NCBI GenBank assembly: GCA_964187785.1
Contig: OZ076409.1
Coordinates: 64,542,001-64,606,000, forward strand
From: Amphiscolops sp. MND2022
Taxonomy: Eukaryota
Reading direction: 5' to 3'
Length of the DNA: 64,000 nt
This document shows positions 820 through 61,110 of the stretch, piece by piece. The stretch's first letter is position 1; each line of letters begins with the position of its first letter. The translations under genes were made by a program, and so were the position numbers. The notes beneath the pieces are model-generated. The model worked only from the letters and a program-made list of their open reading frames with translations. It searched no databases and had not been told where the DNA came from.

Positions 820-1815
820 AACAAGACGGGAACATGTCAAGCCGACGCCCTACTAAGGCACAAAATGCGCAAAGGTTTTAAAACATGCTCAGGGCTTTTT
901 GTATGAAAAATTCAGAAAAAAGTGTCTATACACCCAAAGGGAGACTACATAAAGCGTGGACCATTCAGTGTGAGAAAAACAATGGCGAAACTATCGAAGG
1001 TGGAACCCTTTGGGCTTTTTTTAACGTGTAATTCGTTGCAAAACATCGAAAAATTCAAGGGGGCCTTTCGAGACATCTAAATATTCTCGAAAAAGTCTCA
1101 AAGTCGAAAGAAGCCGGAAATGGCCCATATTGGCGCCATATCTAAGGCTCAAAAATAGCAAAAGGACTTCAAAGTGTCTAAGTATTCTCTTCTAAAGCAC
1201 CTCAAAACGCCAAAAGTTGGACCGGATTGGCGCGCCAGGGGAACGCTTTGAGATTTTTCTTCCCTTCTGTCGCAAATCATCAAAAAATTGAAGGGGGACC
1301 CTTTGGTGTAAAAAATTTTTTGAAAAAGTCTCATAATTCCGAAAAAAAATGAAGGCGGAACCTTTGCGGAAATTGTTTTTGTCGAAAAGTCGCACCATGC
1401 CGAAATAATGAAAACAATTGAGAAAAAAATTTCCGAAAGTCTCCGGTAAGTCGCATAGTGCTGAAAAATGTAAAAGGGGGACCCTTTGGGATTTTTTGAA
1501 CGTCCATTCTGTTGCAAAATATCAAAAAAATTGATAGGAGGGCCCTTTGGAGATATTAAAAAATTGCGAAAAAAGTCTCAAAGCCGAAATTACATGCACA
1601 AAAAAAATTGGTCAAGGGTGAGACTCGAACCCACGTCCTTCTGCTTAGCAGACGTCAAAAACTATCCTAATTAACTTCTATGCTAAGTGGCAGTAGAAGT
1701 TACAAGTGGCAGTTAGTGGACGCAGCTTATAAAGCTTATGAAATCTGTCACTTCGTTGGTCTTAAAAAGTCACTACTATAGTCTGCGTTTTTCTACGAAA
1801 AACGCCGACTAAAAA
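820..1815 (-). mobile_element. Family A HINE-like element(s): two heads (820 and ~1109), one tail, tRNA-like module at 1609-1653
   Basis: Same head, body (AGGGGGACCCTTTGG, AAAAGTCTCACAATGCCGAAAA blocks) and tail motifs as the other copies. Confidence 0.7.
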
Positions 1816-2670
1816 TCAGAAAAGCAATTTCCCTGCTTTTGAAATTTCGTTTATTTTTCTTCAGAATTTCCCGGCTTCCAATGAAGACTTTCAGCAATGA
1901 CATTCTATGCTTTGAATGATTCGAGTGAAGCGGATTTTCGTATTTAGCTATTCGTGTCGAGGACCGATGATCTTTGCCAAAATTTAGCACTATTTTGCTA
2001 TTTATATTTTAGTTTTGTACGACCGGAGAAAAAAATTCCCGTTCCCGAACGAGTATTAAATATCTTCCAGTTTGTCATTTTTTTCCTCAGGAGTCATTTT
2101 CCTGGGGGTTTTCGAAGAGCAAAATCCGCGCAATCTCTCAAATAACGACTCCTATTACTCAAACAAGTAATTAGCTTTGACATGTGATTTAAACGCTTGA
2201 AGCTTCGCCACTTATCGGTTGCAACGCTTAACTTCATTCAGCTAATCGCTTCAGAGGTTTCGCTGAAGAAAAGTTGAATTCTGGAAAGCTTCACTTCGAT
2301 GTCACAATCAAAAATTGAACGTTTTCCAAAACAAACAAGGCAGCAAAACTTACTTTTACTCCACTGCTGCTTCATGAGTTCTTTCTTGCTATCCAACGTA
2401 TTCAGCAACGGATTTCACGGTATAAGCTCTGAGTAAAAACTTCTTGCTTCTTTTAGTTCGCATTGGTGAGAATTGGAATCGGTGATGGTTGCTCCGCTTT
2501 TAGGAGAATGGAGTCACTAACGCTTATTTTTGCACTTGCGCTTTTAGTACGTAAATAACCGATGACGTCACAATGTATAAGGATAGTCAACTCAAACCTC
2601 ATCTTATTGAGACCCCATCGTGTCTTGTCTCAAACTATTCAATCAGATCCCCCAGTAATTTATTAAATTG

Positions 2671-3038
2671 AACAGAGGTCGGCGCCCCCTCAAGGCTCAA
2701 AATGCTCCGGGTACTTCTCAGCTTTAAAGAACTGCCTTTGAATATTTCTCATCGCCAGAGTTGAACAAAACGATAAAAAGGGAGTCTCCTTGGGCTTGAC
2801 GAAGCCTTATTCTATCTTTCAAAAATGCAGTCTCACAGTGTCAAAAATAACCCACATATGACTTGAAACCCAAATAAATATGGAAGGTTCGCCCCTTTGT
2901 ATGATTGTAGCATTTTGAACTTTTATGGTAACTTCGAAAAAACTTAGAATTTATAAAAACTGTTGAAAAGTTAATGAAAAAAAAACGACGAAAAGTCAAT
3001 TATAGTTGCGTTTTATTTCATAAAGCACCGATTAAAAA
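2671..3038 (-). mobile_element. Degenerate family A copy
   Basis: AACAG-AGGTCGGCGCC...AAGGCTCAAAA head and TATAGTTGCG...AAAGCACCGATTAAAAA tail. Confidence 0.55.
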
Positions 3039-6358: not shown

Positions 6359-7567
6359 TTTTTAGTCGGCGCTTTTCTAGTGCAAAGAGCCCGACTATTA
6401 CAGTGGCTAGTCTTTTTAGTCGGCGCTTTTCTAGTGAAAAGAGCCCGACTATTAAGTGGCTAGTTTTTGGTCGGAGCATTTTAACAAAATTAGCCCGACT
6501 ATTACAAGGGCAAGTTTTTTTCTTTTTTTTTTCGTCAGACCACAGAATGTATGCGTAGTGGACACTTTTTCTAGAACCACTAAACTACTGGACCGGCAAG
6601 CGGAAACGCATCTAAGTTAGTGCAAAGGGTCCCCCCTTTTGTGTACTCAATTTTTAACGTAAGATACAAAACCGGACGGGACTACATGAGCCCCCTTTGA
6701 ATTTTTTTCGGCACTGTGCGACTTTTTTTCGATTTTTTTTGTCGGCAAAGGATCCCCCTTCAAATTTTTTGATAATTTGCAGCAAACTGAAGTTTCAAAA
6801 AGCCCAAAGGGTCTCCCCTTTCTAGCTTTCTAGCTTTTCGGCACTATGAGACTGTTTCAAAATTCTCATTTTTCGCTTTTTTCGAAAATTTTTTCAATGT
6901 CTCCAAAGAGTAATGTCTCCCCCCTTCAATGTCTCCAAAGGGTCCCCCCTCAACTATTTTGATATTTTGCAACAAACTGGATTTTGAAAAAATCGAAAGG
7001 GTCCCCCCTTTAACAAATTTTTGAAAAAAATTGCGCTTTTTTGAGCCTTAGATATAGCGCCGACTTTAGACCTCATCGTGTATGTACCACTTTTTAGTAC
7101 AGACTTTACTCGGTTCACGGTGAACCCAGCAGTCACGGGTTCGAGTCCTTGCTTTAGCCAGAAACTTTTTCGATCATTTGCGAAAGCGGACGAGACTAAA
7201 GGGTCTCCTGTTTCAATTTTTTCGGCACTGTGCGCCTTTTTTCGAATTTTTTTTTGCATGCGAAGGGTCCCACCTTCAAGTTTTTTTTTGATATTTTGCA
7301 GCAAACTGAAGTGTCAAAAAGCCCAAAGGGTCTCCCGTTTTAAGTATTTCGACACTACGAGACTGTTCAAAATTCTAGTTTTTTTAAAAGAAACTTAAAC
7401 AAAAATTCGAATTTTTGTCTCCAAAGGGTCCCCCTTCATTTTTTTGATATTTTGCAACAAGCTGGATTCTCAAAAAGCCCGTAGAGTCCCCCTTTTTACA
7501 GGTTTAAAAAAATTTGCGCTTTTTGAGCCTTAGATATAGCGCCGACTTTAGACGTTCCCGTCTTGTT
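6359..7567 (+). mobile_element. Family A HINE-like element with triplicated terminal hairpin and tRNA-like module at about 7100-7170
   Basis: Begins TTTTTAGTCGGCGCTTTT (three ~55-bp units) and ends GCGCCGACTTTA-GACG-TTCC-CGTC-TTGTT. An internal remnant of a second end lies at about 7040-7072. Confidence 0.75.
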
Positions 7568-7686
7568 TTGCTTTTCAAACTATGTCTAAACGAAACATGT
7601 CTCGGATATAATTGAAAACTGACTTTTCAGACGACAAACTAGATCGAAACAGTAAATAATTCTGACAGCTCAGATAACTAAAGCCG

Positions 7687-8010
7687 TTTTTAGTCGACAC
7701 TTTTGAAAAAAATGCAATTTCATAAATTTTATTTGGCCGTTTGGCCTAGCGGTCAACTCAAATTTTCAGACCTGGTGACGGCCTGAAGAGCAGGAGTTAT
7801 GGCTTCGAGTCCCGTACTAAACCAAATTTTGTATGCTTGCAAAAGTAGAGGAAATACCAAAGGGTCCCACCGTTTTTTTCGGCATATCCGGCTTTTCTGA
7901 TTTCTTTTTCCAACCCAAACCCTTGACTTTTAGCAGAACAAGGGCATTTTGCAAGCATAGAGGAGCACCTTAGAATTTTTCGGCACTGTCGAAGACAATT
8001 TTTAAATAAA
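7687..8010 (+). mobile_element. Partial family A copy carrying an A-box/B-box module
   Basis: TTTTTAGTCGACACTTTT start; A-box-like TGGCCTAGCGG at 7742-7752; B-box-like GGCTTCGAGTCC at 7801-7812; family A body blocks follow. Confidence 0.55.
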
Positions 8011-10206: not shown

Positions 10207-10348
10207 TGTTATTTCTTCGTTTATATATTTACAATAAACGTTGACTTGTTTCCACCTTCATCTTGCTTTAATATCATTCATTTGTTACTTTCAGATATAG
10301 TTGACGTTGTGTTTTAATTGAGTGTTATCACAAGACAAGTTTTTATCA
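10207..10348 (+). repeat. 5' LTR (142 bp)
   Basis: TGTTATTTC...TTTTTATCA, contains AATAAA; identical to the 3' LTR. Confidence 0.95.
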
Positions 10349-10350
10349 AA

Positions 10351-10364
10351 TGGTAGCAGGATGA
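10351..10364 (+). promoter_or_regulatory. Primer-binding site for initiator tRNA-Met
   Basis: TGGTAGCAG-GATG two nt after the LTR, matching the complement of the metazoan tRNAi-Met 3' end (TGGTAGCAGAGGATG, recalled) apart from a 2-nt gap. Confidence 0.8.
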
Positions 10365-13300
10365 GCCGATCTACGAGTTATCGCAACCCACCCCCTCTGA
10401 CAGATGGCATGAGCTACGACACATGGACCAAGGAATTGAAAATCTGGCAAGCTGTCACAGATTTGGAACCAGAAAAACAAGCACCCGCAGTTGCGTTGAC
10501 CCTACCAGGCACTTTCAGAGAAGTAGCGGTTGGAATCCCGTTGGAGAAACTGCAAGGTGCAACTGGAATGACAGAGTTGTTGAAAGTAATGGACGAAAAT
10601 TTCAAGAAAGAAAGCGTGGACACATCATTCGAGGCATATCGAGAATTTGAAGCTGTGCGTGGAACAAAAAGCAATGTCATAGGCTACATACAGGAGTTCG
10701 AACGCAAATACAACAAGATCAAAGCCCTGAAAATGGTCTATCCTGATGAAGTTCTTGGGTGCAAGATGTTAGACAATAGCGGTTTGGACAAGCTCGAGAA
10801 ACAAATGCTCCTGACATCGGTAAAAACTTTGAATGTAGATGAAATCAAGGCTGCAATGAGGCGCATTTTCGGATCCGTTGTCGGTAACATAACGGACAGC
10901 GAAGTCAAAATCAAATTTGAGAACGAAGCTTTTGCAGCTGGAAAATTCCACAGGGGACATCCAAGCACTAATCGATTTTACAGAGACAGGAGTAAAAGCG
11001 AATCGACAAGCACGAGTGACCGACCTGCTCCCAACAAGAAGTTGAACCCAAAGAACAAATACGGGAAAACAACCAAATGCGCTATCTGTCAATCCATCTA
11101 CCACTGGGCTCGTGATTGTGAGCATCGCGAAGAAGAAAACACAGTTTTTGAGGGCTCAAAGGAAGAATCAGAAACAACGGAGAAGCCCAAAGAAGGTTTC
11201 GTGTCTTTTGCTTTGACAACAGGAAACAAACTGCTAGAAGAATGCAAAAATTCTGCCCTGTTGGACACTGGTTGCACACACTCCGTCTGTGGATCAAACT
11301 GGCTCGATATTTATGTCAGTAACTTGACCGAAGAGGAACGAGAATCAATTGTCAGTCGCGAAAGCTCAGGCTCCATCGTATTTGGCGATTTGAAGAAACA
11401 GCCGACGTTTATGGAAGTAACTTTCCCGGTATCTGTACTGGGCGTAAAAGGAACGCTCACCTGTGATGTTCTTGAAGGCAATTTGCCGTTACTCCTCAGC
11501 AAAGAAGCGATGAAAAAAGCCAAGTTCAAGATCGACCTGGAAACCGACGAACTGAAAGCTTTCAACAAGACGCTGAAGCTGAAATCTACCAGCTCTGGAC
11601 ATTACATCCTACCTCTCATCGAGCGGACAGAACAAGTTTTTCATGTCGCACACGATTACCGAGACAGCAAAGTCCTTGCCAAACTTCACAAGCAATTCGC
11701 GCATTGCTCCCCTGAAGCTCTCGTGAAACTGATCCGAAATTCTGGCCATGAAGTAAGTCGCCAATTGATTGAGAAAACGCTAGAAGCTTGTCAAGCTTGC
11801 AAGTCTGCGAAACGAAGGAACCCGAAACCAGTCAGTAGTTTGCCACTGGCAACACGATTTAATCAAGTAATTTCAATGGATCTGCATCAGTTACAACCTG
11901 GAAAGTATTATCTGCATATCATCGATCTATTCTCACGCTTCTCTGTCGCGGGAATTCTTCATGACAAAAAGAGCACAACGATAATTGAAATTTTCCTTGA
12001 TAGATGGCTGTCCATCTTCGGCAAACCTTCCGATGGTATCTTTACAGACAACGGTGGCGAATTCAATAATCGCGAATTCAGAGATCTCTGTGAAAATTTG
12101 GATATAAAATGTCTAACATCCGCCGCATACTCACCATTCAGTAATGGGATTTGTGAAAGACACAACGGTACTCTCAGTCTGATGCTGGAGAAAGTCAAAC
12201 AAGAGTTTCCGACACTCTCAGACCAAGCTTGCTTATCATACTGCTGCCAGGCCAAAAATTCGCTCTACAATAACAAAGGATTCACGCCATCTCAAATAGC
12301 AATTGGAGCATCACCTTCATTGGCTCCGATTATGGACAACACACTTTCTTCTTTAGACGGAGTATCCATTTCCCAAACTGTGAGTGCGCACATCTCAGCA
12401 CTGAACAGCGCAAGGAACGAGTATTTGAAGGCTGAATGCAGCGAACGACTCAGAAAAGCATTAAAACACAACGTCCGACCTTCAAGTATGGTTTGTTCTG
12501 GAGATGAGGTGTTTTACAAACGAGCAATTGACAAAAAGTGGCATGGACCGGCTCGTGTTATAGGCACTGACAGCAGTATAGTCTTTCTCAGACACGGGGG
12601 CAGTATTCTGAGAATTCATCAATCTGACGTTCAGCTGACAGACTCAAAAAACGCGTTTAGTGAAGCAGTGCCGTGTAATCGAACAGAGAACGCCACTACC
12701 GAATCATATGAACTAACAGAAGAAGACACTTGTGACTCTGATGACGACGCTCCCAAAAAAGCCAGAACAGAGACAGTTGAAAGCAACGAAAATGAATGGA
12801 CGGACGCAACACATGGTGTCACCACTACAGATACAGTGTCAGAGTTCAAAAACACTGGCGATAAACGCCCTCGTAGAAACGATATTATCAAGTTCAGGCC
12901 TATGGATAAAAACCTCGAAAACGAATACGTGGCGAAAGTATTGAACCCAGCAGCGAAGAGAAGCGGTGCTTATCCGAACTCTTGGAATATCGAGTACGTC
13001 ACTCCAACGTCACTCCAAGGCCAACTCGCAAATATAGACTTGAAACGGGATGTTTCGAGCTGGGAAAACTACGAGGAGATGACCAATGAAGTCTTTGTCA
13101 CAGCTGGTGAAGATCCCAAGTCTTTCGAATCTGCCAAACAAGACGAATTGAATTCATGGAAAACATATGGCGTTTATCGCGAAGTCAAAATTTCAGGACA
13201 ACCGCTGATTTCAACAAAATGGATCACATCACTGCGAGACAATGGAGACGGGACGTACAAATCTAAAGCTCGGCTAGTTGTACGCGGATTTGAAGAAAAT

Positions 13301-22515: not shown

Positions 22516-23937
22516 AACAAGACGAGAACGTCTAAAGACGGCGCCATATCTAAGGCTCAAAGAGCGCAAAACTTTTTTGGAAAAAAACTTGTAATTTTTG
22601 AAAAAATATTTCTTTCAAAAAAAGTCGCATAGTGCCGAAAAATGTAGAAGGGGGACCCCTAGGGATTGATTAACATACATTCAGTTGCAAAATATGAAAA
22701 AACTCGAAGGGGGACCCTTTTGAGACATTAATTTTTTTTTCGAAAAAAAAGTCTCACAGAGCCGAAAATACTCTAAGGAGGGCGTACCCTTTGGTCCCTT
22801 TGAGTTTCTTAGATGATGTAAAAATACTACTTCGCAAGCTTTTGCGCCAGTATTTTAAATTTGCTAAGTAAGAATTGTACGATTTTAAGATTGTAAGAAT
22901 TGTAAGAAAAGTGGACCGATCAGTGTGAGGATTGTAGTCTGAAGAAACAAGCCGGGAACGGCCCAAGTCGGTGCCATATCTAAGGCTCAAAAACAGCAAA
23001 AGGACTTCCAAGTATTCTCTTCTACGGTACCGGAAAAACCCAAAAGTTGAACCGAATTGGCACACCAGAGGCGACACTTCGAAATTTTTCATCCATTCTG
23101 TCGCAAATCATCAAAAAAATTGAAGGAGGGGCACTTTTGATGAAAAAAAATTTTTTTTAAAGTCTCACAATGCCGAAAAAACTGAAAGGGGGGACCCTTT
23201 GGGATTTTTCAACATCCGTTCTGTCGGAAAACTCCAAAAAAAATTGAAGGGGGTGCCCTTTGGGAAATTTTTTTTTCGAAAAAAAGTCTCACAGAGCCGA
23301 AAATACTCTTTGGTCCCTTTGAGTTTCTTAGATGTAAAAATACTACTTCGCAAGCTTTTAAAGTATTTTATTTAAATTTGCTAAGTAAGAATTGTAAGAT
23401 TTTAAGATTGTAAGAAAAGTGGACCGATCAGTGTGAGGATTGTAGTCTGAAGAAAAAAAAAGGTCACTGCTATAGTCGGGCATTTTTCCTTAAAAGGAAA
23501 ACGCGCCGACTAAAAAACAAGACGGGAACGTCCCAAGTCGGCGCCATATCTTAGGCTCAAAAATATTCAAGGAACAACTATTGGAAATATTTGGAAAAAA
23601 ATTATTTTTTTCCAAAAAAAAGTATTTGGTAAAAAAGTCGCACAAATGCCGAAAAAAAACCCAAAAAACCCTTTGGTCTCACCTGTACTTTTGGAAGCAT
23701 TAAAAAAGTTATGGTTTAGTGCGAGAATCGAACCCACGCTCTCCGGCTTGGTCGAAGATGGAAGATGAACAAATATGAAAGATGAACAAATTGTAAGAAA
23801 AGTGTAAGAAAAAATTGTAAGAAAAAACTACTCACTGTAGAGTCGGGCTTTTTTCCTTAAGGGAAAAGGCGCCGACTAAAAACAGTCACTGCTATAGTCG
23901 GGCATTTTTCCCTTAATGGAAAAGCGCCGACTAAAAA
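22516..23937 (-). mobile_element. Cluster of three family A elements (heads at 22516, 22946, 23516; tails ending about 23516, 23882, 23937)
   Basis: Canonical heads with GACG/CGTC or GCCG/CGGC hairpins, a head-to-tail junction at 23501-23530, and a tRNA-like module at 23712-23750. Confidence 0.8.
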
Positions 23938-24250
23938 CACCTTTACCACAAAGATGGGATTTGCACAATGATCTCTAGTTACAGTTAGAGATGAAAACAC
24001 ATTGATTTTTTTCTATTTTTGGGTTGGGGGAGGGGGGTTGAAATTAGGGTGTAGGGTAGATGGCATACAGCATTTGCTCGAAAACAGCCGCCTCTCTAAT
24101 TTATTGGTTGCTGCAAAAAAACTCTGCAGCAATTTTAGTTGCAATGAATGTTGCATCCAAACTGTTCATCTTAGCCAACTCAGCCCTCCTAATATTGAGT
24201 TTTTCAACATGGCCGATTTAGCTCATAATTGGAATAAGTGAAAAATAATT

Positions 24251-24735
24251 AACGAGACGAGAATGTCTCAAGTGAGCCCCCCTTCAAAAACAAAACTCTG
24301 ATCAATCTCAAAAGGCCAAAAAACCTGAATGAGACACTGGAGCCATTTTTAAAAACCTATTTTTTGAGAAAAAATGTCGAAAAATTTGCACAGTGCCGAA
24401 AAACCTAAAGATGAAAACCCAACATCTTTGCCGAAGTTAAAACAGAGGGGAAACTGAAGGTGAAATAAAAAATTTCGGAAAAGTCGCACAGTGTCGGAAA
24501 AAGTCAAAGGGAGGACCTTTGGATCCAATCAAGATTTGCAAACATTAAAATTTTGGTAATGGGCGGGATTCGAACCGACAACCTCCTCCTGGAGAAGTGT
24601 GCATCCAAACCACTAGGTCAAGAGGCTGAGTGAACAAAGTCCGTTACAAATGTGTACCATTCAGTGTGAGGTCTGTGGTCTGACAAAAAACTTGTCACTG
24701 TACAGAGTCGGGCAGAAAAAGCGGGGACTAAAAAA
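24251..24735 (-). mobile_element. Diverged family A copy with a tRNA-sized A/B-box module (24554-24626)
   Basis: AACGAGACGAGAATGTC head; tail GTCGGGCAGAAAAAGCGGGGACTAAAAA. Confidence 0.6.
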
Positions 24736-32130: not shown

Positions 32131-33494
32131 AACAAGACGGGAACGTCCAAAGTCGGCGCTATATCTAAGGCTCAAAAAGCGCAAAGTTTTTAAAATATAC
32201 CCAGGACGTACTTATGAAAAGCTCAGAAAACAGTTTCAAGACAGCCAAAAGGTGCCTTCCATGCTCGATAAGAATGGGAAACAACTTTTCCGCCAAATGG
32301 GAATAAAAAAAAACATTTTTGAAAAACTTCAGATTTTTTTCTTTCAGAAAATGTCGCATAGTGCCGGACAATATAAAAGGGGGACCCTTTGGGGTTTATT
32401 AACATACATTCTGTAGCAAAATACACACAGAGGCGAAGCCGTGCTTCGCAAACACTTGCGAACTTTTGAAGAAAACCAAATAAGCAATATCATACGGAAA
32501 ACCAAGGGTAGAAGGAGATTAAAATTTCATCAATTTTACAGCGCCAAAAAATACCCGAAGGGATACGCGTAAGTCTCGAAAACCAATCTTCCCCAACTGA
32601 AAACAGCAAAAAACCCATTCTTTCTCAACGGAAAACCTTAAACAGAAAATAGAAGAGAAAAAATTCAAAATTTTTCGAAAACATTTTTGATGGTCTCCGG
32701 TAAGTCGCGAAGCCTTGAGGAGTCCTCTCGCAAAACGTTTCGTTTCTTGTAAAAATTGAGCAGGGGCTTCGGTGAAAACAAATTTTAAAAAAGTCGCAAA
32801 GAAAAAAGATCGGTCTTTAAAAAAAGGGTCTTTTAAAACTAAAAATTGAGAAAAAATTTTCCGAATTTTTTTGAAGTTTCCGCTAAGTCGCATAGTGCCG
32901 AAAAATGTGAAAAAGGGACCCTTTGGGATTTTTTAACATTCGTGCTCTTGCAAAATATCAAAAAAATGAAAGGAGGACTCTTTGGGGACATTTAAAAAAT
33001 TTCGAAAAAAAAGTCTCACAAAGCCGAAAAAAAGTCTCACAAAGCCGAAAAGTCTCATAATGCCGAAAAAAGTCAGAACCTTCTGCTTCTGTGAAAAAAT
33101 TAGCGCATACCCACGGGTTCGAACACGAAACCTCTGGGTTGAAAAGCAAGCATCTTACCACTAGACCACGAACGCGTGAAACGTGCGAGTTGCCGCGTGA
33201 AATCAGAGAGTTGTCGCGCGGAAAAAAAAGCACCCGCACTTTCCCATAACACTTGCTTATCGCAAGTGTAAAAACATACTCGAAGGGGCGACCCTTTAGT
33301 CTCGTCCGGTTTTGTAGGTTACGTTGAATTTTTTTTAAATGACCCTGTGCACTAAGTCTCCGCTGGCCGGATTGGCTTTAGTAGTTTCTGTAAAATGTTG
33401 ACCTTTCAGTGTGAGGTCTGTGGTCTGAAGAAATAAAAGGGTCACGGTAGAAGTCGGGCACTTTTCCTTGAAAGGAAAATGCGCCGACTGAAAA
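32131..33494 (-). mobile_element. Composite family A copy with tRNA-like module at 33103-33175
   Basis: Canonical AACAAG-ACG-GGAA-CGTC head; tail GTCGGGCACTTTTCCTT-G-AAAGGAAAATGCGCCGACTG. Confidence 0.7.
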
Positions 33495-36750: not shown

Positions 36751-37565
36751 CTAAAAGCACAAACTAACCTGACTATTATTATCATCTTGCAAGTTTTTTT
36801 GGGTTCAAACAGTTATCTCCACTGAAAGTTGGTACTAATCAATAATATTCTGCTTGTTTTGCGTCCTAAATCAAACAGCGATTCCGGAATTAGGCAACGA
36901 AGATATCTTGCACAACGACTCGGGCCTATTTTACAACAGGGATGTCTGAGCATGGTGAGCTATTGTTCATAAGATCCTAAAAAGTTCTAACAAACATTTC
37001 AGGAGGTCTCAAAGGTAATGTTTTTGGCTCTACGCTCCAATTTTCCAAACGAAAACTTACTATTGTGGATTATTTTCAAAATTATATTCAATTTCTACAA
37101 CAAAATTTTCATTCTATTTGCTATGATGTTATAAATTCACAAACAGCTACCAATTTAACTAATTTTAGTCGGTGCTATATTAGATATAGACCGAATATTA
37201 CAGTGAACTTTTGTGGTTGGCGCAATATGAAATGTCGCCCGAGCATTTTAGTGGCTTTTCCATCGCATTTTAAAATCTATTCGGATTCAACATTTTTGAC
37301 TGAGAACTAAAAAGTAAATAGCGGCCCCGCTATGAAAATGTTTCATCTTTACTTGATCTTCAAATCTGGGACAATTTTCGGCACTGTGCGACTTTTTCCG
37401 AATTACTTTGTTCAAACCAAAAGGTCCCCCTCAACAAAGGGTTAAGAAAGTCTTTTAGAGTTCATTGAATTAGAATTTTCTTTAAGATGACACCTGAGCA
37501 TAGTTGAAAATTAAATCTTATGCGGGGTGCCAACATATAAGGGGTGCTTCAACAAAGAGCTTCTT

Positions 37566-37638
37566 AAGACGAGTCTAGTGGGTAGAGTATGTACTTCCCA
37601 AAAAGGAGGTCGTCGGTTCGAACATGACCAACGCACCA
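37566..37638 (+). pseudogene. Degenerate tRNA-Gly(TCC)-like sequence with encoded CCA
   Basis: D-loop-like GTCTAGTGGGTAGA, loop CTTCCCA, GGTTCGAAC B-box, and 3' end CCAACGCA+CCA. Acceptor and anticodon stems do not pair. Confidence 0.5.
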
Positions 37639-37913
37639 ACGCCGAACGTTATTCATTTTTTTTTTCAAATTAAACCAAATTTCTCCATATGAACTCCTCC
37701 ATACATCTGATAAATTATTCTCATCTTGGAATATTTTTGAGCCTTCAGCGGTAAAATTCAAAAAGTGGGAAAAGAAAAAATAGGGCTATCTTTCTGTTAA
37801 TTAAAGAACTTCACCATGGCAATGAATTGTTCGGAAAAAAACAAGAAGAAAAAAGGGCCTTAATTGAACTCAAAACAAAAACCTCAATGATGAGAACCCT
37901 AGACAACCGATAC

Positions 37914-42105: not shown

Positions 42106-42638
42106 AACAAGCCGAGAACGGCCAAAGTCGGCGCCATATCTAAGGCTCAAAATTTAAAAGGGGGACCCTTCGGGCTTTGTGAAACTCCAGCTGGTTGCAA
42201 AAAAATTTGAAAAAAATTGAAGGGGGACCCTTTGGAGACATGAAAAAATTTCCCGAAAAAAATTTTTTAATGAGATTTTTGAACAGTGTCACAGTGCCGA
42301 AAAAATGTAAAAGGGGGGACCCTTTGCAATTTTTTGACATCCATTGTGTTGCAAAATATCGAAACAAATGAAGGGGGACCCTCTGATGCAATCCAAAAAA
42401 CTTCAAAAAAGTCGCATAGTGCCGAAAAAAGTGGGGCTAAGGTGGGATCTTTGGACGTCTGTTTTGTTTTTTCTTTTCGTTTTGGACGCGCTTCTGAGGT
42501 TGGAGTTGTTGGGGTTTGAAGTTGTTGAGGTTTAAAGTTGTTGAACAAATGAACAAAAAAGTGGACCTTACGCGTCTAAAAAAAACTACCCACTGTAATA
42601 GTCGGGCACATTTTCTACTAAAATGCGCCGACTAAAAA
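42106..42638 (-). mobile_element. Family A copy in the last intron of the EF-hand gene
   Basis: Head AACAA-GCCG-AGAA-CGGC; tail GTCGGGCACATTTT-CTACT-AAAATGCGCCGACTAAAAA. Confidence 0.75.
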
Positions 42639-43377: not shown

Positions 43378-44065
43378 AACAAGCCGGGACCGGCCCAAGT
43401 CGGCGCCATATCCAAGGCTCAAAAATAGCAAAAAGACTTCCAAGTGTCAAGTATTCGTTTACAGTAGTCGAAAATCGATAATTTTTCGAAATTTTTTTTT
43501 GAAAAAATTACATACTAAAAAAATGGACCGAGTGGCGCGCCGGGGCTCGCTACCGCGAGCCCCTGGCGCGCTAACGTCTCACAATGCCGAAAAACTGAAA
43601 GGGGGGAGCCTTTGAGGTTTTTCAACATCCATTCTGTCGCAAAACATGAAAAAATTGAAGAAAAAATTTTTTTTTATTTTCGGGATAAAATCTCACAATG
43701 CCGAAAAAAACTGAAAGGAGGAACCCTTTGGGATTTTCCAACATCCATTCTGTCGCAAAACATCAAAAAAAATGCAGGGGGGACCCTTTGAGGAAAAAAA
43801 ATTTCGAAAAAAAAATCCGAAAAAAAATGTCTCGCAGTGCCGAAAAAAATTGAAAGGGGGGACTCTTTGGTCTCGCCCGGTATGATATGTTACGCGGAAA
43901 AACAGGTAAAACCATTTTGGCCCAGTTCGCTAGGCCAAATGGTGCTATTTGACACCATAATATTTTGTAGAACTTTTAAGAACTATTTTGGTCAGTTCGT
44001 GTGGATAGAAAAAAAAAGAGTCACTATAATAGTCGCGTTTCACTTCATGAAGCGCCGACTAAAAA
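43378..44065 (-). mobile_element. Family A copy in the same intron, with an extra GC-rich hairpin
   Basis: Head AACAA-GCCG-GGAC-CGGC; tail TAGTCGCGTTTCACTTCATGAAGCGCCGACTAAAAA. Confidence 0.75.
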
Positions 44066-50178: not shown

Positions 50179-50532
50179 TTTGCATATTTTTCAACATTTT
50201 TAATATTTTATTCACATAATTTAGTACATATTTTAAGTATTTCAGTTACATAAAAATCCTACCCCTGGTCATTATTATTGGACCTTACATTCATTAAATG
50301 TGAATGTTAAAAACTGTTCCACATTAAATGCATTAATTATCATTGAATGTTCAATTATGCAGAGGTAAACCCTTTTTCAAGTCTTCTTCTTTCATTAATT
50401 AACAAAAAATTGAAACAAATTATGCGTGAGATCCTAGTGATTCGATTTCAGACACCTTTGGTTCTATACCATGAAGACAGAATTCGGGGCAAATTTTTGT
50501 GTTAAAAGATCCGTCAAGTCCTAAATTGTGCA

Positions 50533-51787
50533 GGAAACAGATTTTCATGGCTAGAATGGACAATTATGAACGGGTTTTCATTCAATTTCGTAAAAAATCA
50601 GCTTAATCGGAAGTATACTAATCTACAACCCATTTGCCGTATTACGCTGGTAAAAGACATCGAGAATTTAACCCGTAAAGTAGAAACCAAGATATCAAAA
50701 GATCTTCCAGAAAAATTTGGTTTGTTTTTGGACGGCTGGTCTGACATGGGAACTTCGACCCATTATATGGCAATATATGCCATTTTCGCTACTGATTCGT
50801 CGTTGCTAGCTTTCTCGCCCCTCGAAAATGAAGAAGACTACACCGCTCGCTCACAGGCTGAATTCATACATTCAACTTTGACTATTTTTCAAAAAGACAT
50901 CCGAAATATTGTTTCGATGATTGGTGACAATGAACCGAAAAACGCAAGAATGGCATCCGATATGGACATTTATTTCATTGGTTGGTACAGCCACAAACTA
51001 AACTTAGCAGTTCAAAAGTTTCTGGAGCCATTTGGAGGAACATTGGGAAAATACATAATTTGATGCTAAATTAAAGCGATTGAAAAAACGAGCAGCATTG
51101 AGACGCCATACTCAGTTATCGCCAATATGCTTGAACGAAACGAGATGGAGTTCCACATTTAACATGTTGAACAGGTTTTTTGAGTTGAAGGATTTTATTG
51201 ATGTATCTGATCCTGACTTGGCACCTCGTATTCCTAGTGCTTCTGAAACCATGATAGTTCAAGACCTGTTCAAAAACCTAAAAATCTTTGAGTCAGTATC
51301 AAAAAAACTACAAGAAGCGTCTGTCACAATGCTCGAAGCACGTATATTGTTTGATTCGCTTCTTGAACGCTTTCCTGGCCTCGACTACTACATTTTGTCT
51401 GGTATCAATGGAAAACCTGTAATGAACAGAGCTACTGAATTTGAACTGGCGGTATGGAAAGCCCTAGAAGGAAATATGCTGAAATCGAATGAAAAAGCAA
51501 TTTTAAGTGTTTTTCAAATAGAAGTTTGTGTCGTTGAGAATTATTCGACAAAAAACAGTTTTGCGGATGCTGTATTGGCCAAAAAAGCAAAATGTGAAAC
51601 ATTTGACCTGAAATGGATTCCTCCCACTTCAAACAAAGCAGAGCGTCTCTTCAGTCGAGTAAGTCATATTTTCACGGACTACAGAAAAAGCCTTTCTCCT
51701 ATCAATCTGGAAGCGCAAATAATCCAAAATGTCAACAAGAAACATTGGAACGTTTTCACAGTTCAAGAAATTATTTATTCGAATTAA
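50533..51787 (+). pseudogene. hAT-like transposase of a second type, frameshifted near 51050-51075
   Basis: RFSWLEW, KFGLFLDGWSD, MIGDNE, IGWYSHKLNLAV, NETRWSSTFNMLNRF, and dimerisation-like WIPPTSNKAERLFS. Confidence 0.85.
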
Positions 51788-52629: not shown

Positions 52630-53195
52630 TTTTTAGTCGGCGCATTTTCCTTACAGTGACCTTCTTTTCTTCAGACCACAGACCTCACACTGATCCGTCC
52701 ATTTTTTACAGAAACTACTAAAACTACTCAGGCCAAGTCCGGCCAATGCAAACTTAGTGCAAAGGGAACCCCTTTCATTTTCAGTTTTTTAACGGAACCT
52801 ACAAAACCGGACGAGACTAAAGGGCCCCCTTTCAATTTTTTCGGCACTGTGTGACTTTTTCGAAAAATTTTTATGTCTCAAAAGGGTTCCCCTTCGAGAT
52901 TTTTTGATATTTTGCATTAGAATGTATGTTAATAAATCCCAAGTGTCCCCTTCCACATTTTTCAGAACTATGCGGTTTTTCGAAGGAAAAAATCCCAAGT
53001 TTCTTCTCCAGAAAATTTTTTTTTGTTCCCAGTTGGGGAAGTGGTTTCCGAGTCTTATCGAGCATGAAAGACACCCTTTGAGTGTCTCGAAATTGTTTTC
53101 TGAGCTTTTCATAAATACGTCTTTGGCATAGTTTGAATACTTTGGGCTTTTTGAGCCTTAGATATAGCGCCGACTTTAGACGTTCTCGCCCTGTT
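52630..53195 (+). mobile_element. Family A copy
   Basis: Starts TTTTTAGTCGGCGCATTTTCC; ends GCGCCGACTTTA-GACG-TTCT-CGCC-CTGTT. Confidence 0.75.
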
Positions 53196-55463: not shown

Positions 55464-55881
55464 TTTTTATTTTCCGACCCACATTTTCAATGGGGGAGGA
55501 AAATCATCATCTGTGTTGCGTTTTCATTTTCCGACCCACATTTTCAATGAGGGAGGAAAATCATCATCTGTGTTGCGTTTTTTTCCAAATTCTGCCAAAA
55601 CTCCACTTTGTACAACTCCACTCCACTTACTCAGTCTCCCTGCTCAGCCTTCATCCTTCATACTGAGATGGGAATAATATCTAAAGTAAAAATGGGATTA
55701 AGATCTGAAGGGAATAAGATCTAAAATTTCAGGACGGGAATAAGATCTAAAGGGAATAAGATCTAAAATCACTAAATTTTAGATCTTATTTAGATCCTAT
55801 TCCCCTCCCAAAATAGCTATGGCTCAAGCGATGAAGGCGAAAAGGGAGGAAAATATCCCGGTGCTTAGCGGGTGTCTTGTT
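55464..55881 (+). mobile_element. Family B copy with duplicated terminal hairpin
   Basis: Two tandem ATTTTCCGACCC...GGAAAAT units, a GGGAATAAGATCTAA array, and the end CCCGGTGCTTAGCGGGTGTCTTGTT. Confidence 0.75.
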
Positions 55882-56879
55882 TCTCAGTGAAGCTTTTCGG
55901 GATTGGTTCCTATGGACACAGTAAAGTTGCACTTGGCAAAGACATTGAACAGGATATTATTCGTGAAATGTTTCCAGACGCCTTAAAGAATCAGACATCT
56001 AGTAGCCACAATGGTTTGACAAAGAGCGAATAACGGAACAATATAACCAAAATGCATCTACAGATTTGAAAACTAGTTCATGCATATATGATTCCAACAT
56101 GGCAAACTGAAAAAATACATTTCCATGAGAAACTTTTTGTCTCATGCAAATGTATGTTTTCAATTTGCCAAATTTAGCAGGCAGATTAGAATCCACAGGA
56201 AGAACTCTACGGAGCAGGAACCACCAAACTTAGCTTCCGTTTAGTTAGAATTACTTTAGATCCTTGTACAACCTGAAACTATTAGGGATATAATTTTCAA
56301 ACCCGCAACCTGCCAAATTATGAATAAAATCATGCAAAACATATCCCTAGAGTTGTCTTAGCGTTCATAGTTTCCGAGAAGTTGTGACTACTCACATAAA
56401 TAAAGCCGATGTCTCTCTGTAATTCGGAGATTGGCGATATTCGGGTGAACAGCTTTAAGAATGGAAAGCATAATTGCTTTCTATAAAACAAGAAAAAAGC
56501 GCGCTGTTTCAACAAAATGTCAGAATTTCTCGTAAGATATCTGCAAGCGTCTATGCTGCTCCAATTTCAATGTGAAAGTGTCACTGGTAATCTTAGCCAG
56601 ATGCTCAATTGGTGTTCCGTGTAAGTTGGCTCAATAAGCGAAGTTGTTCCGAAAAAAAAATTTGTCAAGTCTCGGTTTCTTGGTTTTCATGCATCCGTAA
56701 CTGTAATCGTCTGGCGGTCATTGTCCTGACTAAAAGCGTCGAGTAAAAACATTAAAATGACAAAGTCAATTTTCGTAAAGAAAATTCGACCGATTTTGAT
56801 AGATTACCCAATTTTTGAGCCCAACATATAAATTCTGCTCAAATTTGAGTAACTCGAATTTCCTGAATTTTCTCTTTAG

Positions 56880-58121
56880 CACCTTTAACCAGCAAAGTAG
56901 ATAAAATTCAAAAAAAAACTTTTCTCAGGCAGTGCTCCGACTTTAAAACCTGAAGGCTTTTGAATACAGGTTAGAGGTTCAATTCCAGGCACATGCTCTT
57001 CTTTATTCGAATTGCAAAGCTTTACGACACTGGGGGCTCCCATCTTTGTGTTTTTTGGCACTGTATGAGCATTTTTCATTGCACAAAAAATTCCCCCGTT
57101 GGTAATTTTAATTTTTCATGACAAAAAGATTTTTCAAGCATAAAGGATTCCCTTTGATTTTTTCGCCACTGTCCGACTTTTCTCAAAATTCAATTTTCCA
57201 AAAGGGTCCGTTGGTTTTTTGATATTTTTGGATAGAAAAAGCGTTTCCAAGCCCAAAAACTCCCTTTCCCTTTGGGTTTTTTTTCGACACTGCAACCTCT
57301 TAAAAAATCCAATTTTCCAAAATGGCCACTTCGGTTTTTTGACATTTTTGAATAAGCCCTGTTTTTTCAGTTTGGTTTTTAAGCCCTGAAGTTTCAGTTT
57401 GGATTTTTTTCGACACTCCAAGATTTATGAAAATTTTCACAATAACTGTTCCTGGTCATGTTCAAGAGACTTTTTTCTTCATGAGCGGGTGCCGATTTAT
57501 GTCGTTCCCGGTTTGTTCAATCAGAGTATTGTAATACTGCAGTAGTTCCTAAATTCATAAATCTACCGATTAGAAATTAGTAACGGATGGAGCCCAGGTC
57601 TCCGCCTGACAATTAGTGGAACTGCACAAAACCTATGCGAATGTCCTCTCAATACTCAGAAAACTACTGGAATACTTTTCGGTAGAACACTCATCTTTAG
57701 AAAATCGTCAGATCGAGTGGCTTTTCAAAGAAGTCAACTATATGTAATCTTTTTAGTCGACTAATTATAGGCGAATTTTAATTGAATTCCACTGCGTTTA
57801 CGTCGGTTCGAATTCTGCAACGCAATAGAAAAATTTTATGCTTGCAAAAAAGGTCACCCTTTGTTTTTTTTCGGCACTGTGCTATTTTTAGAAAAAATTC
57901 AGTTGGTCAAAGGCTACCCCTTCACTTTTATAAAGGTTTTCGACTAGAAAAAAAAACACTTTGCTAGCTTAAAGCTCCTTTTTTGCACTATGGATCTTTT
58001 TCCGCAGACTGTAAATTTGATAAGAATTTTCAAAATAGTGTCCCTTTGCATTTTTCAAAAAAAATTTGCTGTTTTGGAACTTTGAGCGGCTAAAGACGAC
58101 TAGGGCCATTCCCAGCTTGTT
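56880..58121 (+). mobile_element. Two diverged family A copies (ending 57517 and 58121)
   Basis: Ends GTCG-TTCC-CGG-TTTGTT and GCCA-TTCC-CAGC-TTGTT; start TTTTTAGTCGAC at about 57750; B-box-like GGTTCAATTCC at about 56978. Confidence 0.55.
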
Positions 58122-58838: not shown

Positions 58839-59344
58839 TTACATAGGAGCGTCTGAACAGTCCGATTCAGTGCGGGTAGGTAGAAGTTTAGTTCTCAACT
58901 GTGAAGACTCTTTTCTTGATCTGAAGGGTTTCAACTTCTTATAATTTCTACATTTTTGAGAAAACTGTCTTTTAGAGCCAGTTAGAAACAGTTGAAGTTT
59001 CCGAATTTCTCTGGACAAGGCTGGTTTTTTCAGTTTAGAGCTAGTTGATTTAGCATATGATTCACTGTTTTGGTCACACAGGCAAGGCTCCTCTGGAAGT
59101 CGGAAGTGGGACGGTCTCTGGCTAGAACATCCACAGAGTTCAATTGTGATTTCCGGAGGATAATGGTGGACCCCGGACCCGATAAGACCTATATAGTCAC
59201 CTTCCAGGTATTTGAGGTTGCTGGGAATCCGTTTTTGGTCAGGTCTCCAGAGTTTGGTTATGTAAACTGCTCCAAACAGGAGGAAAAGGATGCTGGATAG
59301 ACAGACTATTGACCAAAAACCGTCTTCTTCCTGCAGTCCATGAC
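58839..59344 (-). CDS. Probable terminal exon of a membrane protein (absent from the ORF track)
   Basis: TTTCAG acceptor, then 167 stop-free codons: HGLQEEDGFWSIVCLSSILFLLFGAVYITKLWRPDQKR...DCSDAPM*. One hydrophobic helix followed by basic residues. Confidence 0.6.
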
Positions 59345-60329
59345 CTGAAACAAGATTCCAGATTTTACATCAATCATATGAGCAAACACTGAGATCTTAC
59401 TTCGTAGCACGTATCCAAGAAAACTTCAGACCATATTGGAGATTGTAAAATCAGAGCATTTCAAAAATTCCATTAAATATCAATATCGCAAAAAATGGAC
59501 CGAAAATAATAAGTAAATTTCAAAGAAAGTGACAGTTGAAATTGTGACCTTTTCTGAATGCAACTATGTGAAAATTCTAACAGGTATGGCATTTCATTTG
59601 TAATACAGTCAATCGCAATTTGAAATCAAACAACCATGAAACTGAATCTTCCTTTTTTCACCCATAATCGGAGCATTCTGACTAACCCAAAGATATGATA
59701 TTAATGTTGCGATTGAACAAATTTATTTGCTGCATATGGTTATTGATCGAAGTGTTCTTCTCAGTTTCCATTTCTATCACTTTAGACCAATAGAAATCAC
59801 GTGCAGATAGCTCTGGATGACGTCATAAAAACTAGAAGACTCCTGAGGTTCAGCGGATTGATGATTATGCTGTCAGCTCAAACACAAGACGTCTAGACTC
59901 AAAGTTCTGATTGACCGCACTCGACGAACCGCCCATGTTCTCTAGAAGCAGAAAAACAACATTGATCTCTCTTAGCATAAACGTTTTACTTGAGTTCACG
60001 AACAAATCCTTCAATCCAAATTTTCCGTTTCAACTGATCGAATCCACATACTGAAAACTTTTAACATAACGACGAGTTCTACACAAAAAAACTGGGACAA
60101 TTCCGAATGAGAAACATCTTTGAAGTCGTGCAAAAACATTTATACACTACTTCTGCATAAACATTGCCTGGAAAAGAATCAAAATATTGAAACCACTTAA
60201 ATCAATCTGGGCGTAGTTAACTCCGAATACACCCAATGCTGAAAAACGATCGAACGATCTAAAAATCGGTCAAAGTACATCTCGGCAGTTTTCCAGTCAA
60301 ATTAACTCAAAAATGCAGCAGAAATGATC

Positions 60330-61110
60330 AACAAGCCGGGAACGGCCCAAGTCGGCGCCATATCTAAGGCTCAAAAATAACAAAAGTACTTCAAAGTGTC
60401 AAGTATTCTCTTCTACAGTACCCGTTTGAGGAAAAATTGAAAAAAAATCCGACTTTTTTGAAATTTTTTTGAAATCCGATTTTTTTTGAAAAATCAGATT
60501 TTTTGAAAAAATTTTGGTCATGGCGGGACTCGAACCCATGTCATTCTGCTTGTCAGACCTCGAAAAAGCCGTAGTGGCCAAGTGGCAGTGAAGTAGTGTG
60601 ACACAGTTTAGTTAGTGCCGGTTTAGTGCCAACTTATAAAATTTATAAAATCTGTCAGTTCGTTGGTCTTAAAAAAAAGTCACTACTATAGTCTGCGTTT
60701 TTCTTCGAAAAGCGCCGACTAAAAAAAGTCACTACTATAGTCTGCGTTTTCGAAAAGCGCCGACTAAAAAACCGGGAACGGCATAAGTTTAACGCTCAAA
60801 AATAGCAAAAGGACTTCGAAGCGTAAAGTATTCTCTTCGATAGAATTCGGAAAACCCTAAAGGTGACCCTTCAGTCTCGTCCGGTATTGTATGTTACACT
60901 AAAAAAGGAACAACTATTATAGTTCAGTTCCTTGGTCCAAATGGCATAATTTGGTCCCTTAAAATTTTGTAGAACTTTGTGTAACTATTTTGGTCAGTTG
61001 ATATGGATTGATAAAAGTCAATAATATATTCGCATTTCACTTCATGAAGCGCCGACTAAAAATGAGTCACTATAAAAGGCGCGTTTCACTTCATGAAGCT
61101 CCGACTAAAT
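60330..61110 (-). mobile_element. Head-to-tail family A dimer with multiplied tails and tRNA-like module at 60515-60560
   Basis: Heads at 60330 and 60771 (truncated); tails ending about 60727, 60770, 61062 and 61110. Confidence 0.75.

What the first reader, a model, noticed from the sequence alone, without database searches (positions are those of the whole stretch)
1609..60560. Helitron-like non-autonomous family carrying co-oriented tRNA-like Pol III modules
Seen: T-arm/B-box modules lie inside family A copies at 1609-1653(-), 7130-7170(+), 7742-7830(+), 23712-23750(-), 24554-24626(-), 33103-33175(-), about 56978(+) and 60515-60560(-). All eight point from the subTIR/T-run end toward the hairpin-CTTGTT end. 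Three have a clear A-box (TGGCCTAGCGG, TGACCTAGTGG, TGGTCTAGTGG) and most are followed by a T-run. The modules differ strongly from each other, and acceptor stems do not pair where a 5' half is visible. Knowledge: A/B boxes drive Pol III in tRNAs and SINEs; DINE-1/HINE elements move as DNA and I do not know them to need such a promoter. Inference: a SINE-Helitron hybrid in which tRNA fragments were captured, perhaps repeatedly (1609 resembles the tRNA-Val 3' half ACGTCTGCT...GCAGAAGG..TGGGTTCGAG, 33103 resembles tRNA-Gly, both from memory), and kept in one orientation for Pol III transcription or TFIIIC binding.
Basis: partly seen in the sequence, partly recalled or inferred. Interest (0 to 1): 0.75.

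Follow-up and report, generated by a model that had tools for sequence, protein, structure and literature searches.

The report
tRNA-derived cargo inside rolling-circle transposon passengers
The tRNA-like pieces are real and sit, always in the same direction, inside an abundant protein-less rolling-circle transposon (HINE) family, but they look like decaying captured tRNA genes that the element does not need in order to spread.

Summary
Observation confirmed and extended. All eight modules exist. I found a ninth at 37568-37638(+) and three A-box-only remnants. The exact B-box motif occurs 5 times against 0.54 expected.

The host repeat meets the structural definition of a HINE, a non-autonomous Helentron:
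- 5' T-run plus palindromic subterminal repeat
- inverted 3' subterminal repeat
- covarying 3' hairpin followed by TTGTT
- no target-site duplication in 36 copies
- head-to-tail junctions

The modules are inherited parts of subfamilies with thousands of copies. They are not separate SINE insertions. There were at least two captures in the window: one old, decayed lineage and a young tRNA-Glu(TTC)-like cassette. A third, tRNA-Met-like, lies in a related 230-bp element elsewhere.

The Pol III or TFIIIC function reading is not supported:
- No module reaches Rfam's tRNA threshold.
- Several modules carry internal T-runs or lack an A box.
- The youngest subfamilies have lost the B box (99-100% identical copies) or have no module at all (96-99%).

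Co-orientation follows from common descent. It is also helped by a polarity I measured genome-wide: HINE 5' ends abut the terminator T-run of tRNA-like sequences 58 times in sense and 3 times in antisense.

No RNA data exist for this animal. The scan noted the same thing earlier on other DNA of this genome (s1-193581).

The parts
1108..1815 (-). Complete HINE copy (M1 subfamily)
   Evidence: The 5' end is TTTTTAGTCGGCG with a hairpin, and the 3' subTIR and terminus are present. The subfamily has at least 4032 candidates at 90-94% identity.
1609..1692 (-). Module M1. It has a decayed 5' half, an internal TTTTT, a short hairpin, a T-arm and an acceptor 3' strand, and is followed by T8.
   Evidence: It is homologous to M8 and to the L039 module beyond the T-arm (z 10-25).
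6359..7567 (+). Composite HINE. It has three tandem 5' hairpin units, an internal 3' end truncated at 7071, then a 5'-truncated copy joined at an AGAC microhomology.
7101..7162 (+). Module M2. The B box is perfect, there is no A box, and a T-run follows.
   Evidence: The same module sits in a standard copy in L035.
7733..7826 (+). Module M3, a full-length 94-nt tRNA-like sequence. The A box has 1 mismatch, the B box has 1 mismatch, and there is an internal TTTT. It lies in a 3'-truncated copy starting near 7686.
   Evidence: It is homologous to L012 and L046 (z 10-28). The subfamily has at least 716 candidates at 76-87%.
23516..23937 (-). Complete HINE copy (M4 subfamily) with two 5' hairpin units
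   Evidence: The subfamily has at least 2954 candidates at 83-92%.
23712..23750 (-). Module M4. Only the T-arm and the acceptor 3' strand remain; there is no A box.
22516..23515 (-). Two further copies joined head to tail (22946-23515 complete, 22516-22945 5'-truncated). Neither has a module.
   Evidence: The junction CTTGTT|TTTTAGTCGG lies at 23516/23515.
24554..24626 (-). Module M5, 73 nt. The A box has 1 mismatch and the B box is perfect. The acceptor does not pair. It lies in a 3'-truncated copy running from 24735 down to about 24260.
   Evidence: The subfamily is old, with at least 688 candidates at 70-80%.
32131..33494 (-). Complete HINE copy of the young M6 subfamily
   Evidence: The subfamily has at least 2109 candidates at 95-96%.
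33072..33278 (-). A cassette of about 207 bp that is absent from collinear relatives. It consists of 102 bp of upstream flank, the tRNA-like gene and 31 bp downstream including T6.
   Evidence: Alignment A1. There are no flanking direct repeats and no A-tail.
33103..33176 (-). Module M6, a tRNA-Glu(TTC)-like pseudogene with a cloverleaf
   Evidence: ARAGORN calls it at 95% thresholds. Rfam tRNA gives 21.4 bits against a threshold of 29.
37163..37760 (+). Old, 3'-truncated HINE copy carrying the ninth module
37568..37638 (+). It has decayed A and B boxes.
56950..56998 (+). Module M7, the weakest. Its B box has 1 mismatch. It lies in a degenerate copy recognisable only by body units downstream.
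60330..60771 (-). Complete HINE copy with two 5' hairpin units (M8, M1-type subfamily)
60515..60600 (-). Module M8. The B box is perfect, there is an internal TTTTT, and T6 follows.
43378..44065 (-). Complete copy of the youngest subfamily. It keeps only an A-box remnant at 43915-43938. The same remnant is at 491-514 in copy 158-654 and at 35070-35093 in copy 34751-35695.
   Evidence: The subfamily has at least 1921 candidates at 99-100% identity.
42106..42638 (-). Complete copy of a young subfamily with no tRNA-like module at all. Copies 17109-17622(-) and 52630-53194(+) also lack one.
   Evidence: This subfamily has at least 2740 candidates at 96-99%. The 52640-52900 backbone has at least 5494 candidates.

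Best explanation
Family A is a non-autonomous rolling-circle element of the Helentron-associated (HINE, DINE-1-like) kind. It is presumably moved in trans by the Rep-helicase of Helentrons that this genome holds.

Its cis signals are:
- a 5' T-run followed by a palindromic subterminal repeat hairpin
- a 3' inverted subterminal repeat followed by a 4-bp covarying hairpin and TTGTT

The tRNA-like modules are captured host tRNA genes carried as cargo.
- One old capture gave most modules: 1609, 7130, 7742, 23712, 24554, 60515 and probably 37568 and 56978. It has since lost the A box, been internally deleted or acquired internal T-runs in different subfamilies.
- A second, recent capture put a roughly 207-bp fragment, a tRNA-Glu(TTC)-like gene with its own flanks and terminator, at another place in the backbone (33072-33278).

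Co-orientation is inherited within each lineage. Between lineages it is favoured by the way these elements integrate. They land in T-runs with their own 5' T-run on the same strand. Pol III terminators behind tRNA-like sequences are therefore natural landing sites, and the tRNA ends up upstream and in sense.

Shown here: the anatomy, the inheritance, the decay, the dispensability and the polar juxtaposition.

Inferred: mobilisation by Helentrons, the capture route, and that the B boxes are not used.
For: HINE architecture:
- The termini were read in 8 copies.
- The 5' hairpin folds with z -3.6 and -6.7.
- The 3' stem covaries between GACG/CGTC and GCCG/CGGC.
- None of 36 delimited copies has a TSD of 2 bp or more, and the 5' T-run varies from 2 to 7.
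- The genome has 152 Rep-domain matches with open frames up to about 2600 aa.

The modules are inherited:
- Each module region recurs with its flanks in hundreds to thousands of places.
- The 30-copy consensus includes the module.

Lineages:
- Homology extends beyond the T-arm among M1/M8/L039 and among M3/L012/L046/M4/L004/M5/L032.
- M6, L021 and a genuine tRNA-Met stand apart.
- The cassette is an insertion relative to collinear relatives.

Decay:
- Rfam tRNA scores are 21.4 bits for M6 and 25.0 for L021, and nothing for the rest. A real tRNA-Met scores 66.2.
- M1, M8 and M3 have internal T-runs, and M2 and M4 lack an A box.

Dispensability:
- The subfamily that lost the B box has copies 99-100% identical.
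- A module-free subfamily is 96-99% identical.
- Only about 7 of 23 complete copies sampled carry a B-box module.

Polarity:
- B box, 13-18 nt, then a HINE 5' end occurs 58 times genome-wide.
- The antisense arrangement occurs 3 times (p 3e-14).
- The two terminal motifs are about equally common.
Against: - The autonomous partner with matching ends was not retrieved.
- No RNA or ChIP data exist, so Pol III or TFIIIC occupancy of the intact B boxes is not excluded.
- The B box is the least substituted stretch among 30 M4-type copies: 2 of 300 sites against about 2.5% nearby. This is marginal and post hoc.
- The T-arm is also the best conserved part between lineages, 0.76 against 0.51-0.61. That comparison is biased because the modules were found by their T-arm.
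- All 3 independent captures are in sense. This is what the rival predicts too.
- The step from juxtaposition at a terminator to internal capture is not shown. The window's modules are not followed by a 5' hairpin.
Confidence: 0.75

Rival explanations
1. One reading: the module is a functional Pol III promoter or TFIIIC (B-box, ETC-like) site. Selection on the master copies retains it in sense orientation, for example as a chromatin boundary, or because an antisense Pol III complex would block rolling-circle replication.
For: - B boxes are perfect or off by one in 7 of 9 window modules.
- The B box has the fewest substitutions among 30 copies.
- There were at least three independent acquisitions, all in sense.
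- The M6 subfamily, with a near-intact gene, is young.
Against: - The youngest subfamilies have no B box (99-100% identical copies) or no module (96-99%).
- A boxes are lost, terminators are internal and no module reaches the tRNA threshold.
- Three sense events have p of only 0.125.
- The polar T-run targeting explains the sense orientation without any function.
- The conservation tests are biased or marginal.
Confidence: 0.13
2. The modules are heads of ordinary tRNA-derived SINEs that inserted independently into HINE copies.
For: The sequence is tRNA-derived and has A and B boxes. The genome holds several tRNA-like repeat types.
Against: - Flanking direct repeats do not exceed shuffles, and there are no A-rich or LINE-like tails.
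- Module and flanks are one unit of each subfamily consensus.
- The position in the backbone is fixed.
Confidence: 0.02
3. Family A is itself a retroposon: a SINE whose 3' hairpin mimics a LINE tail, with the tRNA part as its promoter.
For: A hairpin lies a few bases from a fixed 3' end. Copy number is very high.
Against: - The module lies 100-330 bp downstream of the 5' end and is followed at once by a T-run terminator, so the 5' hairpin and the body would not be transcribed.
- There are no TSDs in 36 copies.
- The subterminal inverted repeats and exact head-to-tail junctions fit DNA-level rolling-circle elements.
- Most copies lack a promoter.
Confidence: 0.03

Closest known systems
HINEs / DINE-1-like non-autonomous Helentrons (Thomas et al. 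2014, PMC4067079; oyster Cg_HINE, PMC7492417)
   Same: - terminal T-runs of variable number
- a 5' subterminal repeat with its complement forming a palindrome
- an inverted 3' subterminal repeat followed by a stem-loop close to the end
- no target-site change
- repeated internal units and clusters
- very high copy number
   Different: - The 3' subterminal repeat lies about 20 nt from the end, not 38-60.
- The internal units are dispersed and diverged, not a clean tandem array.
- About a third of copies carry a tRNA-derived module. I found no paper describing that for HINEs.
Host-sequence capture by Helitrons and Helentrons (end bypass, filler DNA)
   Same: Foreign genomic fragments are inserted in the element interior without TSDs and then amplified with it. 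One composite has an internal 3' end that lacks its hairpin (6359-7567).
   Different: The cargo is a Pol III gene with its terminator, not a fragment of a protein-coding gene. The capture route was not reconstructed here.
tRNA-derived SINEs
   Same: tRNA-derived sequence with A and B boxes, in thousands of dispersed copies.
   Different: The module is internal, not at the 5' end, and is followed directly by a terminator. There are no TSDs and no LINE-type or A-rich tail. The element moves as DNA.
Bivalve pearl / DTC84 elements, reported with 'incomplete' Pol III boxes (PMC3879986)
   Same: HINE-type elements in which authors looked for box A and box B and found only partial matches.
   Different: There the boxes were judged absent or incomplete, with no tRNA homology shown. 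Here the tRNA derivation is clear: cloverleaf, anticodon loop and T-arm.
Elements that target Pol III genes (yeast Ty3, Dictyostelium TRE; from general knowledge)
   Same: Insertions accumulate next to tRNA genes with a fixed polarity.
   Different: Those elements recognise Pol III factors upstream or downstream of the gene. Here a plain preference for a T-run on one strand is enough to explain the pattern.

Membership tests
HINE (non-autonomous Helentron) | 5' end with a few Ts, then a subterminal repeat within a few nt, often palindromic with a nearby complement | tested here: met
   TTTTT then AGTCGGCGC occurs in 15 places in the window. The hairpin with its complement folds with z -3.6 and -6.7.
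HINE (non-autonomous Helentron) | Inverted copy of the subterminal repeat near the 3' end, followed by a short stem-loop 8-35 nt from the terminus | tested here: met
   GGCGCCGACT is followed by a 4-bp stem and TTGTT. The stem covaries: 25+ copies have GACG/CGTC and 11+ have GCCG/CGGC. Its folding energy alone is not significant.
HINE (non-autonomous Helentron) | No target-site duplication; insertion in T-rich sequence; variable number of terminal Ts | tested here: met
   None of 36 copies has a TSD of 2 bp or more (1.2 expected by chance for 2 bp). The 5' T-run has 2-7 Ts. 5' ends abut T-runs behind tRNA-like sequences. No empty sites were examined.
HINE (non-autonomous Helentron) | Central tandem repeats or microsatellite | tested here: inconclusive
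   Repeated body units are seen by eye and by self-BLAST. TRF reports only the tandem 5' hairpins and one 21-bp array.
HINE (non-autonomous Helentron) | Autonomous Helentron (Rep-helicase-endonuclease) with the same termini | not tested
   Rep domains are present (152 matches). Earlier scan notes claim such partners; I did not check them.
Canonical Helitron | 5' TC, 3' CTRR, insertion between A and T | tested here: not met
   The ends are a 5' T-run and 3' CTTGTT.
tRNA gene (Rfam RF00005) | Score at or above 29 bits, with a cloverleaf and pairing stems | tested here: not met
   The best in the window scores 21.4 bits (33114-33175). The others score nothing at E 10. A control tRNA-Met scores 66.2. 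The modules fold no better than shuffles (DNA parameters).
tRNA-derived SINE | tRNA-related head at the 5' end, with A and B boxes driving transcription of the whole element | tested here: not met
   The module is 100-330 bp inside the element and is followed by a T-run within 1-18 nt.
tRNA-derived SINE | Target-site duplications and an A-rich or LINE-derived 3' tail | tested here: not met

The most novel reading that the evidence does not exclude
The tRNA-like module with its T-run is not neutral cargo.

One version: TFIIIC bound at the B box protects master copies from silencing, or avoids head-on conflict with rolling-circle replication.

Another version: the module's terminator makes each copy a landing pad for further HINE insertions. 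This family would then build its own safe-haven targets, which would explain the nested and tandem arrays and the repeated sense-oriented acquisitions.
Probability: 0.12. Interest if true: 0.7.

Novelty: new member of a known kind. Interest (0 to 1): 0.38.

Why it matters
The finding is a clean, very abundant example of a rolling-circle passenger family that has picked up Pol III genes several times. It therefore seeds an animal genome with tens of thousands of B-box motifs.

It gives a simple, testable reason why tRNA-like sequences and HINEs travel together and in one direction: polar integration into terminator T-runs.

For annotation it is a warning. These modules are neither tRNA genes nor SINEs. 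B-box or TFIIIC motif scans in this genome will be dominated by them.

Tried and rejected
- **ARAGORN with introns allowed and thresholds lowered to 80-90%.** It gave hundreds of calls, and shuffled sequence gave half as many. I kept only the 95% result.
- **A regular-expression T-arm scan.** It was swamped by T/A palindromes of the body units. I replaced it with an nhmmer profile.
- **More copies of each subfamily, donor tRNAs and Rep-bearing elements.** I did not try to get those letters another way. Donor identity and the autonomous partner therefore stay open.
- **RNA evidence.** No RNA run is on record. The four runs laid are DNA contigs of one sample and show only that the repeats are very deep. 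Their many joints come from other copies and gave no clean empty site.
- **Conservation of the B box between lineages.** I rejected this as evidence. The modules were ascertained by that motif, and their T-arms resemble unrelated tRNAs as much as each other.
- **The 'encoded CCA' idea.** Rejected. The CCA is acceptor positions 71-72, or 72 alone, plus the discriminator and the next base. It is not a 74-76 tail.
- **TRF** did not find the body units as arrays.
- **Rfam matches to miRNA families at 26135-26264.** These are a long perfect hairpin unrelated to this finding.
Full report
**Observation**

The window is AT-rich animal DNA (36-42% G+C). ARAGORN at default settings and Rfam at gathering score find no tRNA in it.

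- The exact B-box motif GGTTCGANYC occurs 5 times against 0.54 expected. No shuffle out of 100 reaches 5.
- A T-run follows 8 of the 9 modules within 18 nt.
- I found a ninth module at 37568-37638(+).
- Three copies keep only an A-box-like remnant, at 491, 35070 and 43915.

**The host repeat**

I read copies on both strands and profiled them with nhmmer. This gives one architecture:

- A 5' T-run is followed by AGTCGGCGC and its complement. They form a hairpin present in 1-3 tandem units. It folds with z -3.6 and -6.7.
- A short conserved block follows, then a variable zone, then repeated body units.
- The 3' end carries the inverted subterminal repeat GGCGCCGACT, a 4-bp stem and TTGTT.
- The stem covaries between GACG/CGTC and GCCG/CGGC.
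- In 36 delimited copies there is no target-site duplication of 2 bp or more. The 5' T-run varies from 2 to 7.
- Copies join head to tail exactly, as at 23516/23515.

These are the published hallmarks of Helentron-associated elements (PMC4067079; PMC7492417). They are not those of canonical Helitrons.

The genome has 152 matches to the Helitron Rep domain, with open frames up to about 2600 aa. I could not fetch their flanks, so the autonomous partner is untested here.

**The modules belong to the element**

Each module region, searched with its flanks against the whole assembly, recurs many times as one unit.

| Type | Query region | Candidates (at least) | Identity of top 40 |
|---|---|---|---|
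| M4 | 23700-23960(-) | 2954 | 83-92% |
| M1 | 1560-1820(-) | 4032 | 90-94% |
| M6 | 33030-33300(-) | 2109 | 95-96% |
| M3 | 7680-7900(+) | 716 | 76-87% |
| M5 | 24480-24740(-) | 688 | 70-80% |

- The consensus of 30 M4-type loci includes the module at full conservation.
- The modules have no direct repeats of their own beyond what shuffles give, and no A-rich tails.
- This rules out independent SINE insertions.

**How many captures**

I excluded the T-arm and scored local alignments of the flanking 70 and 50 nt.

- M1, M8 and the L039 module are linked with z 6-36.
- M3, L012 and L046 are linked with z 10-28.
- M4, L004 and M5 join that group through the shared downstream block (z 5-17).
- L032 bridges the M5 5' half (z 6-8) and the M1-type 3' half.
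- M2 sits at the same backbone position in a standard copy.

These form one old lineage.

M6 is different. Alignment with two collinear module-free copies shows a block of about 207 bp inserted after the first body unit (33072-33278). It holds 102 bp of foreign upstream flank, a 74-nt gene and its T6.

- ARAGORN at 95% thresholds draws it as tRNA-Glu(TTC), with 6 of 7 acceptor pairs.
- At that threshold there are 3 real calls and 0 in shuffled sequence.

A third capture lies outside the window. A 230-bp element with its own 5' palindrome and a hairpin-CTTGTT end carries a module with these properties:

- Rfam scores it at 25.0 bits.
- Its 5' half matches a genuine tRNA-Met that I held (z 10.9).
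- The element has at least 4004 candidates, with sharp boundaries.
- A copy of that family without the tRNA part is at 55464-55882.

**State of the modules**

- A real tRNA-Met scores 66.2 bits. M6 scores 21.4. The old lineage scores nothing at E 10.
- M1 and M8 have TTTTT, and M3 has TTTT, between the A-box and B-box regions.
- M2 and M4 have no A box.
- The acceptors of M3 and M5 do not pair.
- The modules fold no better than shuffles.

They cannot give functional tRNAs, and most could not give a full-length Pol III transcript. Intact B boxes could still bind TFIIIC. That is untested.

**Dispensability**

- The subfamily that has lost the B box and keeps only the A-box remnant has copies 99-100% identical to the window copy.
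- A subfamily with no module at all is 96-99% identical.
- The module-free backbone from which M6 arose has the most candidates, 5494.
- Of 23 complete copies in the window and in 200 kb of random genome, about 7 carry a B-box module.

The module is therefore not needed for spread.

**Orientation**

Every module in a delimitable copy is in sense. Within a lineage that is inheritance. Three independent sense events have p 0.125.

I tested a mechanical cause using genome-wide pattern searches.

| Arrangement | Total matches | Matches at gap 13-18 |
|---|---|---|
| B box, 12-35 nt, then HINE 5' terminus (sense) | 77 | 58 |
| B box, 12-35 nt, then reverse complement of HINE 3' end (antisense) | 14 | 3 |

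- The reversed-pattern control for the sense search gives 0 matches.
- A gap of 13-18 places the element's T-run right after the discriminator base, which is the Pol III terminator. The excess there is significant against a uniform gap (p 3e-20).
- Sense against antisense at that gap gives p 3e-14.
- The two terminal motifs are about equally frequent in my sample, 89 and 80.
- The matched acceptor sequences are diverse, so these are many separate events.

HINEs thus integrate into T-runs with fixed polarity. This leaves tRNA-like sequences just upstream and in sense. The next step, internal capture by end bypass or template switching, is inferred. The composite at 6359-7567, whose internal 3' end lacks its hairpin, shows that such joins happen.

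**Tests of constraint**

- Among 30 M4-type copies the B box has 2 substitutions in 300 sites, against about 2.5% nearby. This is marginal and post hoc.
- Between lineages the T-arm is 76% identical against 51-61% for the flanks. The modules were found by that motif, and their T-arms are as similar to unrelated tRNAs, at 70-77%.
- Both tests are inconclusive.

**Expression and literature**

- No RNA run is on record for this organism. The four runs that hold the stretch are DNA contigs of one sample.
- I found no paper describing tRNA-derived modules in HINEs.
- Bivalve pearl and DTC84 elements were reported to have only incomplete Pol III boxes (PMC3879986).

**Earlier notes of this scan**

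These are unchecked AI notes on other DNA of the same genome.

- s1-193581 describes the same phenomenon and reaches the same 'inherited cargo' reading.
- s1-151876 and s1-151893 describe the HINE layout and claim full-length drivers.
- s1-189798 describes the 230-bp element.

I reached my reading before seeing them, and I tested the points above independently. The claim of full-length drivers I could not test.

**Verdict**

This is a real, well-defined feature: a new member of a known kind of transposon, with unusual but probably passive cargo. The functional Pol III or TFIIIC reading remains possible at roughly one in eight.

Noticed in passing
genome-wide: HINE 5' ends sit directly on the terminator T-run behind tRNA-like sequences 58 times in sense against 3 in antisense. 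This is a polar integration preference that I have not seen described for Helentron-type elements.
   Followed up: partly
window 55464-55882 (+); L021:1071-1300 (-): A second rolling-circle-like family. It has a 5' palindrome (TTTTCC...GGAAAA, duplicated in the window copy) and a 3' hairpin CCCGG...CGGG followed by YGTCTTGTT. The 230-bp form elsewhere carries a tRNA-Met-like module and has at least 4004 candidates. The window copy has other filler instead.
   Followed up: partly
window 26135-26264: A near-perfect 130-nt AT-rich hairpin. It matches several plant miRNA-precursor models on both strands, below their thresholds (72.8 bits against 83). It is probably a palindromic repeat, not a miRNA.
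   Followed up: no
window 10322-14587 (+): An intact 1421-aa open frame that looks like a Copia-type Gag-protease-integrase-RT-RNase H polyprotein.
   Followed up: no
window 49152-51787 (+): A run of open frames (165, 164, 165 and 235 aa) that look like pieces of a hAT-type transposase broken by stops or frameshifts.
   Followed up: no
whole window: Family A copies are strongly biased to the minus strand. 13 of 16 exact 5' termini and 17 of 18 terminus-like 3' motifs are on the - strand. This is partly due to tandem arrays; otherwise it is unexplained.
   Followed up: no
L002-L030 (M4-type loci): Most M4-type copies are followed directly by the same 5'-truncated second unit, which ends in its own CTTGTT. 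A two-unit composite was therefore amplified as a whole.
   Followed up: partly
L002-L030 alignment: CpG sites in these copies are not more substituted than other sites (about 2.9% against 2.4%). This hints at little germline CpG methylation of these elements, or at their youth.
   Followed up: no
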